From contig NW_003314347.1 of assembly GCF_000143415.4 (NCBI RefSeq), positions 705,438-769,437 of the forward strand: a stretch of DNA of 64,000 nt, written 5' to 3'. The position numbers and the translations under genes are program-made. Shown piece by piece: positions 47,421-59,678 of this stretch; the stretch's first letter is position 1; each line of letters starts with the position of its first letter. The stretch comes from Selaginella moellendorffii (lineage: Eukaryota > Plantae > Lycopodiophyta). Below the pieces are notes generated by a model. The model saw nothing but the letters and a program-made list of their open reading frames with translations, was not told the origin of the DNA and did not search any database.

Positions 47421-49467
47421 TTAGCATCTACTACTATAAGGAGCAAACGCCGAACTTTGTGGGCCGCCGGATCTGGCCAATCGGGGCCGTCCGATGGGGG
47501 GGTAACTGTAAAAGGGTTATTTCTTTGACCACGTGTTTGAGAATAATCGCGCTGATGTTTGCTCCCGGCCAATGGGAGGCGGCCAAGCCACGTGGGGCGG
47601 GAGAGGAAGGCCCGGCAACGCGTGGCACATGCAAAGTGTTGACCGGGGATTGCTGTTCCAGGGCGTCACTCCGGGCAGGATCAAGTGGGTCGCGGCCCTT
47701 GGAGCGTGCTGTGGATCGCGATTTCCTCCGGTGGGTAAGCAAATCCACTCCCAAATCGTTGCTGCTGGCTGGGATTCGAGCTTGATCGTGTCGTGATCCA
47801 GCTTGGTTTTGTTTTGTATGTTTGTCTAGGGTTTTTGAGACGGCGAGAGAGCCCCTGCCGCTGCTGCTGATTCACGATCCAAATCGCCGGATTCTGATCA
47901 GACTCACCGAGCAGCTTTACAAGGAGCTCAACGGCAAATCCAGCGACCGAGAGAGGATCAAGCGAGCGCGGAAGATGATGAGGCTCCAGAAAATGCTGGA
48001 TAGGATCCCAAGTGAGAGGAAACCGTGGAAGTCAGTCCGGTGAGGTGGTCTTCGTGGAGGCAAAAAAACTATATGATCGTGTGGGGAGAGATTTTGTTGC
48101 CGAATTCAAGAGGAGACAGGTAAGTTTGATATACCTTCCAGATTCCAGATGGCCGTTTGCTAATAACTTCCGTGTTTGTTGTAGAGAGTTGGAGTAACGA
48201 TGAGTGTTGTTTTGTTGGAACCATGATGGCGAGAAGATGATTGGCCGGGCTGGAGCGAACTCTAAGACGACTAGACCCTGGGTTTACCTGAGAAGAGAAC
48301 ATGAGCAAACTGTTCTAAGCACGTCGAAGAAACGAGAAATGAAGTTGTCTCCAAGCTCGAGAAGTTGGCTGCAAGGATTGGTCAACTGGAGGCCAGTGCT
48401 CGGACTCTAGCATCGGAGAAGCCAACTTTCAAGAGTCAAATCCAGAAGTTGGATCCGGTAAGGTTGTCCATGATAGTAGTGAGGAATGACGTAAACCAGT
48501 GCCAGATGGCTGCAAGATGGCGAGAAGACAATATAGCTGAAGCTGCTCATGACCGGGGTTTCAGATGGCTGCGGAGACTATAAGACAGAGTATGCTAGAC
48601 GTTCTCTGTCATCTGGTGGAATGAGGGAAGTGTTCGGAGAGGAACCCCAGGGGATAATGGCTGACGGAGTCGAATCCGCTGCACGAGGTGGAGCTCTCGG
48701 CCAGGAGCACGTTGAGAAGAGGATGGCAGAGTTTGGAAGCGCAAAGGCAAGCCTGGAGAAGCAAGTAAATGGCAGCTGATGGAGAGGATCACAGGGCTCA
48801 AGGCGCTCGAGGAGAGAGAGACGTGCCGAATGCAAAGGAAAGCTTTGGGGAGACTGAACGAGGAGCTCCGAAGGATGAAGGCTGAGGCACCGAGGGATCA
48901 GAGAGCACAGTTGGACAAGTCAGTTGCCGTGGAGCACCGAGCTCAAGAGGTTTGACGGATCAAATGGACGCTACATGCGACAAGAAGGAGGCTTTGCAAG
49001 TCACTCCTCAAGCTCTATTTTTGTGTGCTCCCACTCGAGCTTCTCAGCACGATGAAGGCCTGAAGTGGCAGAAGCATTTGTCAGAGACGTCGAAGAAACG
49101 AGAATTGGAAGATTGAGAAGTTGGCTGCAAGGATTGGTCACGTTGAGGCCAGTACTCGGACTCTTCCATCGGTCTTTTCCAGCAGCAGCGCGTCCACTCT
49201 CCTTGATGTGCACAGCGATTCGAGCCGCGGCCTCAAACTCCAGCCAGCCATCCATGACGATCATCTGCCTCTCATCGTCATCATCTGCTGATGCTCCCAC
49301 TGAAGATAAGAAGCTAGAATACATTTTGGACGCCTTCATCGAGCGAAATAGTTATTGTGAGTTTTGCATGTGCCTAATGACGTGGCAATAATTAAGCAGG
49401 CCTTTGGGCCAACGGTTGTGATTAACCCAAAGTTAATCAATTGTTTCATTCAGGATTGCCCTCTCCG

Positions 49468-51295
49468 ATGGCAGCGGCAGCTAGCGATTCTGATGTGGGG
49501 TCTCAAGATCATGTAGATTACAATTACCAGCCATCGCCAGATGATGTTTCTTCACAGCAGCAACAAGTTCTAGGTGATGTAGAGATGGGTGGAGAGAGCA
49601 GTGAACCAGGTTTGTGTTTATCTTGATAAACCAGAATTGAATCACTTTTCTTTCCAGGATCTGAGCACCTTACACAGCTTAGTGCTTCAGGTACTTAGTC
49701 TATTCCAATACAGTGCTTTACAGCTTAACAAATAGGTGTACAAGAAGACTTTAAACAGCCGGTACAGCCGTTACATTTCCAAAGTCCCTTTGCTATTTTA
49801 GCAGGTACTGGCACTTGGCTTTTTTGCTCCATAAACCTTCTCTGTGGCCAGATCCAGGTGCTCAGACACAAACTTCTAGCCAAGTGCCCCGTGGGATTAT
49901 AGGAGGTACTACTCAATTTTAGAATTTTTTTTTTAGTTATGGGTTTGTAACGGGCTTTTTTAGCTAAGCGCAAATTATATAGCATTCAAGACCCTGGCAT
50001 ATGGAATATGATTGCTTCTTCTGAGGAAACACAATATGCATGTGTTCATATTGCGGATCTACAGCTCCATTCAGGTGGTGAGCCGCTTCTTATATATGTA
50101 TTATCTCGGTACGGCAGTTATGATTTCCAACATGAGATCCACTCAACAAGCATGGCATCAACATCAAGGTTCCTTAATATCGATTTCACTGACAGCTACG
50201 GCATGCACCTTGCGACAGCTTCAATGGCAGCCAACGCTGCTGACAAATACAGCCACCTTTTCAAGCCATCTAACTGGCTGTGTATTCAACACTACAAAGT
50301 CAGAGCTAAAAATCCGAAGTATCATTTGGGGCTCCATCGTCTCTCAGTAGATATTTCTATGGCCACACATGTTCGAGCATGGCCAGAGAAGGCTCCTCCA
50401 GTGCTTGATTTTGTCAGACCATCAGACATTGTTCCACTGAGTCAGTTTGCAGTGGATGCTTCTGCTTATACTTCTTCAACGGTTGCTGCGGCAATCACTG
50501 GTGTAGATCAAACGCCTAACACTACAAACATCATATTCATTGCTGATGATCCTGAAGCTGAAAACACCTATAAGGTATTTGTAATATTTTGACTAGATTT
50601 TTTGGTGAACTTCAAATATAGGTGCATGTGCTGGGTGATATGGACCATGTCTATCATGAGCTCAAATCATCATGGTTTGCTGGGGACATGCCAAGTCGTA
50701 TTTTCTACAATCTCCGAGGAACTAAAGATAAAAATGTGTTCAGGATTGCACCCTCGACTATTGTCTTGAAAATTCCTGACGATACACCTTGGGATCATAT
50801 ACAAAAGCAGTTGCACTCTGTCTCATTCATATATGGAAAGAACTTCTTTGGGGTACGTCTCTCTTGATGTATACCAGCCGTTCAGAACACATGTTTTGTC
50901 AATAGGTGCATGGCCATTTCATCCCTGAAAACCCTCGAGCAATCTCTGTTTGTTGCGGCTGCCATGTTTGCAAAAAGTTTAGGGTCGAGAAACAAACGCG
51001 AGATATTGGTTGGTGCCACCATTGCAAGAACGAACGAACGTTTTTTCAAACTTTGCGGGTCCATGGCAAATTCTATCCAGATACTGGCCACCCCCAAGAT
51101 GTTTGCATGGAGGACACTTATATAGACCAAGCATATGGTCTCACTCCTGGCCAGTTTCTAAGAATGTTCACCTCTACTCGAATGCCTGAGGCAATCAAAC
51201 TTTTGGAGACAAAGAAGCCACCAACAGGCCACTTCTTATTTTCGACTGGTGCCGATCAAAGCTCACCAAAAGTTATTGCATTCAAGGCTGATTAG
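49468..51295 (+). CDS. Helitron-borne RPA1-like ssDNA-binding protein (OB folds plus C4 zinc ribbon), multi-exon
   Basis: OB-fold-like RFLNIDFTDS...ADKYSHLFKPSNWLCIQHYKVRAKNPKY; C-terminal CHVC...CHHC; GT-AG introns. RPA-like genes are a known feature of plant Helitrons. Confidence 0.65.
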
Positions 51296-58262: not shown

Positions 58263-59678
58263 CTAACTCCTGTCCTACTACACTTTAAAACATAAAAACA
58301 AACTACAATAAACTTTGTTTGTTTTTTAATTTTCCCTATGGCCCAATGGATAACAATAGACTGGTGCTAAAAATAAAAGAATCATTTCACAAGGAAATTG
58401 TGAGATGTGAGCAAATTCTCACAAAGATATGTTAGTAAGTTTGAGAGGCTTTGCCAACTACCCAGCATTGGCTGGGCAAGTACTAGTTTTATTATAAGTG
58501 GTAGAACAGTAATTTCCATAATCACCCGGATTTTTGCTGACAACTTCACTCTTTCGATTCGATTTCTTTGCTCGGGATGCGGCGATGGGAGGAGACGCTA
58601 CCGAACAAGGAACAGTACCTGATGGCGAGGAAAGTTGCAATGTTGAAGATCTTTGCAGACGGGTTGATGGCTTACAGGTGAGGCGACACTATCCTTGAGA
58701 GGAAGGGATATATTCGAAGGAGCATGGTCAAAATGCAGCTTTTCAACAAAGCGGTCCCAGCGTTCGAGAGTTTCTCGACGACACGAAAAGTTCTACCACG
58801 GATCAGGACAAACGTGTTCTGGAGACTCTGGAGTCGAGGCTGAAGAGCGTCTTGACAGTGATAGCAGCCGGAGCTTCATGCTGTAAGTTGGCCCGAGTTT
58901 CGGAAGTCTGGCACCCGAGACTCCGGGCTCGTGCTATGGAGACTGACTTTCCGGAACCCATGCCATGCATCTTCAAGCTCACTAGCAATGGTTCCAGTGT
59001 TCAGCGAAGACACTTTTACGTGCACCGTCTTCTGGATCTTCCGGAGAAGCATCAAAAGCCGCATGAAGTTCGATACTGTGGAGTCTGGATTCCAGTCATG
59101 GCTCGACTTCCATGGAAGCAATGGCCTTGAGCGAGAGAGGCTCGTTTTGCTGAATTCGTAATCAAAGCGGAGCTCGGGATTCTCGAAAGTTGGAGCAGAA
59201 GACGAGCCAGGAGGAAAATGGCTAAGCATCGTCTCTAAGGTGGAGATGGCTTGCCTCCCAGCACAATGAAACTCTTGGAGCTTCGGCAATGCCATAGTCT
59301 TCCTTGCTTGTATCTAAAGTTCGTTTCTTTGTTCTCCAGCAGCCGAGTAGCATACTCGCTTCAAGCTGCCGGTTTTGAATCGCCATCGACAGGCCAATGC
59401 ACAAGCTCTATCCAGTGATCATCCACCTGGCCATAACTCTCGCAAGATTCCTCGGAGATCGCGGCGATCTTCACTCGCGTGATTGCTAAAACTTTCACTG
59501 CTACAAGAGCTCAGTAAATCTCATAGCGAGAAAGAGGTGGTAAAGCGAACAAAGTCATCACAAGCTGGGGAAGAAAATCCAGGAGAAGAAAGAGGAGTAC
59601 CGCTGCTTTAGAGGAGGATGAGGGCTTTCAATCGACGGGTGGAGCGTAGGAGCTCCACCCGAGAGAGTTCCATCACCA

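What the first reader, a model, noticed from the sequence alone, without database searches (positions are those of the whole stretch)
47427..58486. Potentially active cargo-laden Helitron: RepHel + RPA-like gene + at least five host fragments
It has canonical TC and CTAG ends at an A|T site, a perfect hairpin, an unbroken RepHel ORF with HUH, both tyrosines and all helicase motifs, and an RPA1-like gene. Gene capture is usually described in non-autonomous Helitrons; here a putatively autonomous element also carries coiled-coil, PPR, nucleotidyltransferase, NYN and RCL1 pieces. Two deviations from the usual consensus (NPKRPEI for NPKWPEI, YLFQY for YLFKY) may impair activity.
Basis: partly seen in the sequence, partly recalled or inferred. 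Interest (0 to 1): 0.8.

Follow-up and report, generated by a model that had tools for sequence, protein, structure and literature searches.

The report
Recently mobile composite Helitron in spikemoss
This is a real 11-kb rolling-circle jumping gene (Helitron) of the spikemoss Selaginella moellendorffii, absent from the sister chromosome copy and still carrying unbroken transposase and RPA-like genes, so it is a good candidate for a live plant Helitron, though it is an ordinary kind of element.

Summary
The window is Selaginella moellendorffii scaffold GL377651.1. The Helitron is real. The other haplotype (GL377585.1) has an empty site, and a second full copy lies on GL377609.1 (71 substitutions and 5 indels over 11 kb). 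The whole 11-kb unit, cargo included, therefore moved recently as one piece.

- **Ends:** TC and hairpin-CTAG recur in four family copies with different flanks.
- **RepHel:** The 1,446-aa RepHel is intact only here. Its lineage evolved under purifying selection (pN/pS 0.23, against about 0.75 in dead copies).
- **RPA-like gene:** It has three exons and GT-AG introns. It is a native family gene, not cargo.

- The empty site joins 47426 to 58523, not 58487. A 36-bp AT-rich tail after CTAG came in with the element, and the target was A|C.
- The element is a composite. A second, 5'-truncated copy of the 5' region (53193-53727) separates an RPA/cargo half from a RepHel half.
- Only about 3.2 kb (47887-49370, 51457-53192) is subfamily-specific cargo. 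NYN is supported; PPR and RCL1 are not.
- YLFQY is family-wide. NPKRPEI (W483R) is private to this copy.

Autonomous Helitrons with cargo and 3'-end bypass are already described. This scan has also flagged many cargo-bearing Helitrons elsewhere in this genome.

The parts
47427..58486 (+). Composite Helitron as bounded by the family termini (11,060 bp)
   Evidence: 5' TCTACTACTATAAGG and 3' hairpin plus CTAG recur in L003, L004 and L005 with different flanks. L005 8807-19832 matches the full length at 99%.
47427..47886 (+). 5' terminal region, copy 1 (complete, starts with TC)
   Evidence: 89% identical to the L004 5' end at 7450-7666 and 81% to the L003 5' end. It begins exactly where the other haplotype's sequence stops.
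47887..49370 (+). Subfamily-specific captured segment Y1: coiled-coil-like ORF pieces, internal repeats, and a fragment also present in a small Helitron at 25274-25359
   Evidence: No DNA or tblastx match in family copies L003, L004 or L006, but present in L005. No significant Pfam hit.
49371..51456 (+). RPA-like gene region shared with the family; minimal model is exons 50008-50574, 50622-50852 and 50906-51295 (189+77+129 codons)
   Evidence: 87-88% identical to L004 9228-11285 and L006 11062-13028. GT-AG introns of 47 and 53 nt, all in phase 0. Pfam DUF223 E = 0.057. Atlas nearest clusters are DUF223/RPA70 OB at 0.94 for exon 1 and Rep_fac-A_C at 0.93 for exon 3. pN/pS 0.35 against L004.
51457..53192 (-). 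Subfamily-specific captured segment Y2, holding a 5'-truncated NYN_YacP gene fragment (NCBI model about 51333-52834, minus strand) and a repeated 117-bp fragment (52937-53053)
   Evidence: The NCBI model in L002 at 3414-4915 carries PF05991, and the same model appears in L005. The peptide MKVVVVFDAKESG starts at 52834. Absent from L003, L004 and L006. CTP_transf_like E = 0.0076 at 51641-51790(-) is not significant.
53193..53727 (+). Second copy of the 5' region, lacking about the first 70 nt of the terminus, with a 45-bp tandem duplication; it runs seamlessly into the RepHel half
   Evidence: 91-97% identical to 47497-47886. L004 and L006 show the same sequence as part of their single 5' region.
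53922..58262 (+). RepHel transposase ORF, 1,446 aa from the first ATG, no intron, GC 0.33-0.35
   Evidence: Pfam domains, motifs, composition. 93% DNA identity to the broken copies in L003 and L004. Branch pN/pS 0.23.
58461..58486 (+). 3' terminator: hairpin CCCAGC/GCTGGG followed by CAAGTACTAG
   Evidence: Conserved in L003, L004 and L005.
58487..58522 (+). 36-bp AT-rich tail (22% GC) inserted together with the element but not part of the family sequence
   Evidence: Absent from the empty allele L001 and from the 3' flanks of L003, L004 and L005.

Best explanation
**What it is.** This is one copy of a young composite subfamily of a Selaginella moellendorffii Helitron family.

**Family layout.** The canonical layout is 5' region, RING-containing segment, RPA-like gene, further gene, RepHel, hairpin-CTAG.

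**Origin of the subfamily (inferred).** Rolling-circle transfer started at the 5' end of a cargo-bearing, RPA-carrying relative. It ran on to the terminator of a downstream, 5'-truncated, RPA-less RepHel element. That fused the two into one 11-kb unit.

**Recent movement (shown).** The unit then transposed at least twice:
- Once to GL377609.1. That copy is now dead.
- Once to this site, 6 bp after the stop codon of a kinase-like gene, on one haplotype only.

**The last jump (inferred).** The CTAG terminator was overrun by 36 nt, or filler DNA was added. The DNA was joined between A and C.

**How it works (inferred from the family and from Helraiser).** RepHel, an HUH/Y2 nuclease fused to a Pif1 helicase, nicks at A|TC and unwinds 5' to 3'. 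It stops at the hairpin-CTAG. The RPA-like protein coats the displaced strand. The NYN fragment, the coiled-coil pieces and the other inserts ride along passively.

**State of this copy.** It keeps both genes intact and differs from the ancestor of the two composite copies by three clearly polarised amino acids in RepHel (up to eight if the five unpolarisable differences are its own). It may therefore still be autonomous.
For: **Organism and allelism.** The MurE ORF is 100% identical to XP_024517730.1, and both haplotype scaffolds were found.

**Empty site.** L001 is collinear at 98.3-98.7% on both sides and jumps from window 58523 to 47426.

**Second full-length copy.** It has 71 substitutions and 5 indels and sits in unrelated flanks.

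**Termini.** They are the same in four copies.

**Canonical layout.** Seen in L004, L003 and L006. Y1, Y2 and the second 5' region are absent there.

**Two halves with different histories.** The two 5' regions inside the element differ by 3-9%, although the two composite copies differ by only 0.64%. Synonymous divergence from L004 is about 0.19 for the RPA half and about 0.08 for the RepHel half.

**RepHel.**
- It is intact here. L003, L004 and L005 carry stops.
- The W branch has 36 synonymous and 31 nonsynonymous changes (pN/pS 0.23), against 62 and 173 in the dead copies. Fisher p = 5e-5.
- This copy has 3 private nonsynonymous changes, against 10 in L005.

**RPA-like identity.**

**Published precedent.** The literature describes bypass to a downstream or 5'-truncated Helitron's terminator and 3' transduction (PMC4778049; PMC6431247).
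Against: - No transposition, transcript or circle data are available.
- W483R is a private change in the N-P-K-W motif, where 44 of 60 relatives and all family copies have W.
- This subfamily lacks the RING-containing and second-gene segments that other members keep. If those are needed, it is not self-sufficient.
- The donor locus of the 36-bp tail was not found, so the read-through is inferred from the empty site and from composition alone.
- The order of events that built the composite cannot be reconstructed from five loci.
- The RPA-like assignment rests on weak Pfam scores and language-model neighbours. HMMER against 1.84 billion proteins and against PDB sequences found no named RPA, and the structure models were too poor to use.
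Confidence: 0.75

Rival explanations
1. The unit is real but this copy is not autonomous. It was moved in trans by another family member, and its RepHel is an inactive passenger because of W483R and/or the missing family genes.
For: - W483R is private and derived.
- The sister copy, L005, is already dead.
- Other members keep two further gene segments that are absent here.
- Differences between this copy and L005 look nearly neutral (9 synonymous, 18 nonsynonymous).
Against: - The ORF is unbroken over 1,446 codons, and 165 of 172 near-invariant positions are kept.
- No other intact RepHel of this family was seen among five loci.
- Position 483 is C, A, S or L in 14 of the 60 relatives, and other non-W residues in two more.
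Confidence: 0.35
2. The insertion was canonical (A|T, ending at CTAG). The 36 bp after CTAG are host DNA that the other haplotype lost by an independent deletion or by Helitron excision with flank loss.
For: - The flanks within about 1.5 kb of the site are unusually diverged and rich in indels between haplotypes (90-93% against 98.3-98.7% further out).
- The tail begins with T, as a canonical target would.
Against: - The deletion would have to start exactly at the insertion point.
- There is no microhomology signature: both CA dinucleotides are kept.
- The tail is 22% GC, while the flanks are 51-54% GC.
- The two composite copies differ by 0.64%, less than the 1.3-1.7% allelic divergence. The insertion is therefore probably younger than the haplotype split.
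Confidence: 0.22
3. The composite arose inside one element by break repair with filler DNA or template switching, which copied several ectopic templates and re-entered the element upstream. It did not arise by read-through from one Helitron into a second, truncated one.
For: - The cargo is patchwork: pieces in both orientations, one fragment present twice, and shared with an unrelated small Helitron.
- No recognisable 3' end lies between the halves.
Against: - The two 5' regions differ by 3-9%, far more than the two composite copies differ.
- The RPA half and the RepHel half show different divergence from the same canonical copy.
Confidence: 0.2
4. These are two independent neighbouring Helitrons (47427-53192 and 53193-58486), not one mobile unit.
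For: The internal repeat of the 5' region suggests a second start.
Against: - The empty site spans the whole block.
- L005 repeats the whole block at 99% in different flanks.
- The internal copy lacks the TC terminus.
- No 3' end precedes the internal copy.
Confidence: 0.02

Closest known systems
Canonical plant Helitrons with RepHel plus RPA-like gene (Kapitonov & Jurka type; rice Mothra sister family, PMC4683698)
   Same: - TC...hairpin-CTAG termini and no target duplication.
- RepHel with HUH, two Tyr and a Pif1 helicase.
- A co-oriented RPA70-like gene upstream of RepHel.
- Deletion derivatives that keep only RPA (L006, comparable to the Mothra 'mother' element).
   Different: - The host is a lycophyte, whereas PMC4683698 reports Helitron RPAs only from monocots and dicots.
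- RepHel is intronless, has 34% GC, and its nearest database relatives (40-48% identity) are animal and metagenomic sequences.
- It has a duplicated 5' region and about 3.2 kb of extra cargo.
Helraiser/Helibat 3'-end bypass and de novo 3' ends (PMC4778049)
   Same: - The terminator is overrun, with flanking DNA carried to the new site.
- New chimeric elements form when a Helitron uses the end of an adjacent 5'-truncated Helitron.
- Empty-site evidence is available.
   Different: - Here the intact hairpin-CTAG was overrun by only 36 nt.
- The new junction (…ATAAT|C) shows no CTRR-like end and no overlap with the target.
- This is a natural event in a plant, inferred and not observed.
Pleurotus ostreatus HELPO1 autonomous Helitrons with captured genes (PMC4289320)
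   Same: Putative autonomous elements that carry extra genes within their boundaries and are polymorphic between two genomes.
   Different: - HELPO1 cargo lies downstream of RepHel and consists of whole genes of unknown origin.
- Here the cargo lies upstream and is mostly fragments.
- The architecture here shows a two-element fusion.
Maize gene-fragment-carrying Helitrons (Morgante 2005, Du 2009, as cited in PMC6431247)
   Same: Patchwork of gene fragments in both orientations, and chimeric gene models that run from host into element.
   Different: The maize carriers are non-autonomous. This one keeps an intact RepHel.

Membership tests
Helitron (canonical, Helitron1-type) | RepHel protein: HUH motif, two catalytic tyrosines, SF1B Pif1-like helicase | tested here: met
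   Pfam Helitron_like_N 1.3e-60, PIF1 1.6e-55, Pif1_2B 7e-18. H543-C-H545, Y678, Y682, Walker A and B and the GDFRQ motif align with 60 relatives.
Helitron (canonical, Helitron1-type) | 5' TC and 3' CTRR termini shared by several copies in different flanks | tested here: met
   W, L003, L004 and L005 all start TCTA(C/G)TACTATAAG and end ...GGCTGGGCAA(A/G)TACTAG. Their 3' flanks differ: TTTTATT, TCTAGTC, TGTAATC and TATAAGA.
Helitron (canonical, Helitron1-type) | Short GC-rich hairpin about 10-12 nt before the 3' end | tested here: met
   6-bp stem at 58461-58476, ending 10 nt before the end, conserved in the family.
Helitron (canonical, Helitron1-type) | Insertion between host A and T without target-site duplication | tested here: not met
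   No duplication, and the 5' side follows host A. But the empty allele reads GCA|CAC, and 36 extra bp follow CTAG, so the 3' junction is not canonical. The L005 copy follows G of another Helitron's CTAG. This fits published bypass events and does not remove the element from the family.
Helitron (canonical, Helitron1-type) | Presence/absence polymorphism with a precise empty site | tested here: met
   L001 (GL377585.1) is collinear with the window on both sides and lacks 47427-58522.
Autonomous (self-mobilising) Helitron | The encoded RepHel is catalytically active on the element's own ends | not testable with these tools
   Only indirect support: an intact ORF, purifying selection on its lineage, and three clearly polarised private amino-acid changes, one of them W483R.
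RPA70-like ssDNA-binding protein of plant Helitrons (Pfam DUF223 / Rep_fac-A_C) | N-terminal OB fold of the DUF223 type | tested here: inconclusive
   - Pfam DUF223 scores E = 0.057 here, 0.094 in P0247 and 0.005 in the distant homologue P0249, all below the curated cut-off.
- 15 of 30 Atlas neighbours are DUF223/RPA70 clusters at 0.94.
- phmmer against 1.84 billion proteins found no named RPA.
- The AF2 model has pLDDT 51 and was not usable.
RPA70-like ssDNA-binding protein of plant Helitrons (Pfam DUF223 / Rep_fac-A_C) | C-terminal OB fold with a four-cysteine zinc ribbon | tested here: inconclusive
   - C-x2-C-x14-C-x2-C is readable in exon 3.
- 17 of 30 Atlas neighbours are Rep_fac-A_C clusters at 0.93.
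- No Pfam or PDB sequence hit.
- The AF2 model has pLDDT 40.
   - NYN_YacP: on record for the NCBI models at this locus and in L005, but not recovered from single translated pieces.
- CTP_transf_like: E = 0.0076 on one 50-aa piece.
- PPR and RCL1/RTC: no hit in 135 pieces.
- Parent genes were not located.

The most novel reading that the evidence does not exclude
This copy is a currently active, self-sufficient plant Helitron: the master of a subfamily born by fusion of two elements. Its AT-rich, intronless RepHel belongs to a lineage closer to animal Helitrons than to angiosperm ones, possibly acquired horizontally. It would then be the first natural plant Helitron that could be tested directly for transposition, and a natural record of terminator read-through.
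Probability: 0.2. Interest if true: 0.7.

Novelty: new member of a known kind. Interest (0 to 1): 0.42.

Why it matters
- **A testable plant Helitron.** Helitron mechanism has been studied experimentally with the reconstructed bat element Helraiser (PMC4778049). To my knowledge no natural plant Helitron has been shown to be active. This locus offers an intact RepHel with exact ends, an empty allele, a 99% sister copy and dead relatives for comparison. That is a compact starting kit for a transposition assay.
- **A clean natural example of capture.** It shows how Helitrons pick up DNA and how new subfamilies arise, by fusion of two elements and a short 3' overrun.
- **A possible extension of the RPA range.** If the RPA-like gene belongs to the plant Helitron RPA clade, that clade reaches lycophytes. 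This goes against the angiosperm-only distribution reported in PMC4683698.
- **What is not new.** Cargo on autonomous Helitrons and end bypass are already published. This scan has also noted many cargo-bearing Helitrons in this genome.

Tried and rejected
- **Pfam on cargo pieces.** Ten cargo ORFs, then all 79 stop-to-stop pieces of 40 aa or more, then 46 pieces of 24-39 aa, then 10 pieces of the 5' regions gave nothing significant. There was no PPR and no RCL1.
- **PDB sequence searches.** Searches with RPA exons 1 and 3, singly and as profiles, were blank.
- **Structure prediction.** AlphaFold2 on exons 1 and 3 with shallow alignments gave pLDDT 51 and 40. No fold search was run, because matches to such models would be meaningless.
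- **Exon chain of the NYN model.** Enumerating GT-AG exon chains to recover the 221-aa NCBI model gave too many solutions and was abandoned.
- **Parent genes inside the window.** blastx of the cargo against the window's other ORFs found only the fragment shared with the small Helitron at 25182-25424, plus a weak PPR-like match (E = 0.003 in a tiny database) inside the family 5' region. Pfam did not back that match.
- **The 36-bp tail.** A search in all fetched loci and the window found no second copy.
- **RepHel's nearest relatives.** Cluster look-up showed unnamed metagenome contigs, so horizontal transfer could not be assessed.
- **Word search with RepHel.** No protein above 48% identity was found. 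RepHel of this family is simply not annotated in the assembly, so family copies had to be reached through RPA-like gene models.
- **Joined models.** The joined (spliced) RPA-like model was not searched.
- **Two separate Helitrons.** This reading was rejected.

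
Full report
**1. Where we are.** The ORF at 44511-46286 (minus strand) is 100% identical to Selaginella moellendorffii MurE homologue XP_024517730.1. The window lies on scaffold GL377651.1. Locus L002 equals window 56247..33859 reversed. Neighbouring genes are plant genes: a PPR-E protein, NAL1, SAGA-Tad1 and KDM5. The contig is not human. The assembly holds both haplotypes; the allelic stretch is on GL377585.1 (L001).

**2. The observation.**
- The 5' end is A(47426)|TC(47427). The 3' end is CTAG at 58483-58486, followed by T.
- The hairpin CCCAGC-ATTG-GCTGGG lies at 58461-58476.
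- A single ORF runs from 53913 (TTG) or 53922 (ATG) to 58262. It carries Helitron_like_N, PIF1 and Pif1_2B.
- Aligned with 60 database relatives, it keeps H-x-H, both tyrosines and Walker A/B. It keeps 165 of 172 near-invariant positions.
- GC is 0.33-0.35 over RepHel and 0.43-0.56 over 47427-53900.

**3. The empty site.** L001 is collinear with the window at 98.7% over 12.4 kb on one side and 98.3% over 4 kb on the other. It jumps from window 58523 to 47426.
- Read on the window's strand, the other haplotype is ...TTGATTAGCA|CACTCGGATTTTTGCTGAC.
- The window has ...TTGATTAGCA|TC...CTAG followed by TTTTATTATAAGTGGTAGAACAGTAATTTCCATAAT, then CACCCGGATTTTTGCTGAC.
- The haplotype-specific DNA is therefore 47427-58522 (11,096 bp).
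- The 5' boundary is exactly the TC. The target in the empty allele is A|C. Nothing is duplicated.

**4. Family copies.** RepHel of this family is not annotated, so the protein word search found nothing above 48% identity. Gene models built on the RPA-like gene gave access to other loci.
- L004 (GL377677.1, 7450-17812) and L003 (GL377589.1, 9052-17391) are older copies. RepHel DNA is 93% identical, and the ORFs are broken by many stops.
- Both have the same 5' end, TCTA(C/G)TACTATAAGG, and the same 3' end...CCAGCATTGGCTGGGCAA(A/G)TACTAG, in different 3' flanks.
- This fixes CTAG at 58486 as the family terminus. It also shows that the 36-bp tail is not family sequence.
- The tail is 22% GC, against 51-54% in the host flanks. 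It has no second copy in anything fetched.

**5. Architecture.** L004, L003 and L006 share a canonical order:
- a 5' region of about 550 bp;
- a segment whose gene model has a RING finger;
- the RPA-like gene;
- a further gene segment;
- RepHel and the terminator.

The window copy differs from this order.
- After 460 bp of 5' region comes Y1 (47887-49370).
- Then comes the RPA-like region (49371-51456, 87% identical to L004).
- Then comes Y2 (51457-53192).
- Then comes a second copy of the 5' region that lacks about the first 70 nt (53193-53727).
- That second copy runs without a break into RepHel, exactly where L004 has its 5.2-kb RPA block inserted.
- Y1 and Y2 have no DNA or translated match in the other family copies.

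Two facts point to two parents rather than an internal duplication.
- The two 5' regions differ by 3-9%, while the two composite copies differ by 0.64%.
- Synonymous divergence from L004 is about 0.19 in the RPA-like gene and about 0.08 in RepHel.

The simplest reading is the published one. [quoted passage not shown]

**6. The unit moves as a whole.** L005 (GL377609.1, 8807-19832) repeats the entire 47427-58486 at 99%, with 71 substitutions (59 of them transitions) and 5 indels. Its flanks are unrelated. It sits directly after the CTAG of a different Helitron (68% identity in the RepHel region), and TATAAGAC... follows it. The 90%-identity protein cluster of the cargo/RPA model has only these two members, so the subfamily is probably small.

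**7. Is this copy alive?**
- L005 has Q455* in RepHel and R310* in the RPA-like gene. The window copy has neither.
- Polarised with L003 and L004, the window copy has 3 synonymous and 3 nonsynonymous private changes in RepHel (R48Q, W483R, A767T). L005 has 3 and 10. Eight more differences (3 synonymous, 5 nonsynonymous) could not be polarised.
- On the three-copy tree, the branch to the window copy has pN/pS 0.23 (36 synonymous, 31 nonsynonymous). The two old copies have 0.73-0.76. Fisher p = 5e-5.
- Q681 (YLFQY), S1127 and other departures from the wider consensus are shared by all family copies. They were present while the family multiplied.
- R483 (NPKRPEI) is private to this copy. It sits where 44 of 60 relatives have W.

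Autonomy is plausible but unproven. Mobilisation in trans remains a serious rival.

**8. The RPA-like gene.**
- Three exons (50008-50574, 50622-50852, 50906-51295) are joined by GT-AG introns of 47 and 53 nt, all in phase 0. More small exons probably lie upstream.
- Splice sites and the stop position are conserved in L003 and L004. pN/pS against L004 is 0.35.
- Exon 1 gives Pfam DUF223 at E = 0.057. Its Atlas neighbours are DUF223/RPA70 first-OB clusters.
- Exon 3 has C-x2-C-x14-C-x2-C, and its Atlas neighbours are Rep_fac-A_C clusters.
- These are two independent pieces pointing to the same protein. However, HMMER against 1.84 billion proteins, PDB searches and AlphaFold gave nothing usable. 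I put RPA70-like at about 0.75.
- The joined model was not searched; exons were handled separately by reference.

**9. The cargo.**
- Two NCBI gene models, here and in L005, carry a recorded NYN_YacP hit. The model starts inside the domain (MKVVVVFDAKESG at 52834, minus strand), so it is a truncated fragment.
- A 50-aa piece hits the start of CTP_transf_like at E = 0.0076, which is not significant for 79 tests.
- Coiled-coil-like repeats fill Y1.
- No PPR or RCL1 signal was found.
- A 78-117-bp fragment occurs twice in the cargo and once in the small Helitron at 25032-26080.

**10. Comparison and verdict.** This is a member of the canonical Helitron group.
- Its one tested departure is the A|C target with a 36-bp overrun. 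That matches known bypass behaviour.
- Autonomous Helitrons with captured genes are known (PMC4289320).
- Earlier notes of this scan list many cargo-bearing and stacked Helitrons in this same genome.

The value of this locus is practical. It offers an intact, haplotype-polymorphic element with exact ends, an empty site, a near-identical dead sister and older relatives.

Noticed in passing
window 9402-10478 and 25032-26080: The two small Helitrons flagged by another finding have 3' ends close to this family's (26055-26080 differs at 3 of 26 bases and ends CTCG) and a related 5' region motif (GGCCAATGGG...). One carries the same 117-bp fragment as this element's cargo (25282-25398 matches 52937-53053 and 49166-49251). 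They may be non-autonomous clients of this or a related RepHel.
   Followed up: partly
window 46385-47426 and 58523-60024 versus L001: Allelic identity falls to 90-93%, with several indels, within about 1-1.5 kb on both sides of the insertion. It is 98.3-98.7% further out. The cause is unknown: a decaying kinase-like gene, or an effect of the insertion.
   Followed up: no
window 46941-50928 (+): GenBank model EFJ10851.1 (786 aa, named 'protein kinase domain-containing') is a chimera. Residues 1-158 are the host kinase-like ORF that stops 6 bp before the Helitron; the rest comes from cargo and RPA-like exons. Whether a transcript supports it is unknown.
   Followed up: partly
L003 17392-17411: Between two head-to-tail Helitrons lies TCTAG repeated four times. 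The second element's 5' end is itself TCTAGTAC..., so it contains CTAG|T, a mimic of the 3' terminus. This could reflect repeated abortive initiation or termination, or serial insertions at the tip.
   Followed up: no
L005 8767-8806 and 4423-8220: The sister composite copy begins immediately after the hairpin-CTAG of a different Helitron whose RepHel region is 68% identical in DNA. Its 3' flank (TATAAGACTTTTGGGCC) resembles a family 5' region lacking its first 8 nt. So Helitrons sit tip to tail here too.
   Followed up: partly
L003 19302-20392 and L004 2167-3188: Two further elements share RepHel homology that stops at the same point (window-equivalent 54850). This suggests a deletion-derivative subfamily that keeps only the first 309 or so codons of RepHel.
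   Followed up: no
L006 10001-12273 (P0247); L003 and L004 minus-strand models: In canonical family members the model upstream of, or fused to, the RPA-like gene has a RING finger (zf-C3HC4_3, E = 8e-5). Antisense models with a JAB domain overlap the RPA-like gene. Neither is present in the window copy.
   Followed up: no
window 53922-58262: All named proteins among the 120 best RepHel matches are from animals (pseudoscorpion, hydrozoans, springtails, lizards, frogs) at 40-48% identity; the rest are unnamed metagenome contigs. No plant protein appears, and the ORF is intronless with 34% GC in a genome region of about 47% GC. This may mark a lineage separate from angiosperm Helitrons. It was not tested by a tree.
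   Followed up: partly
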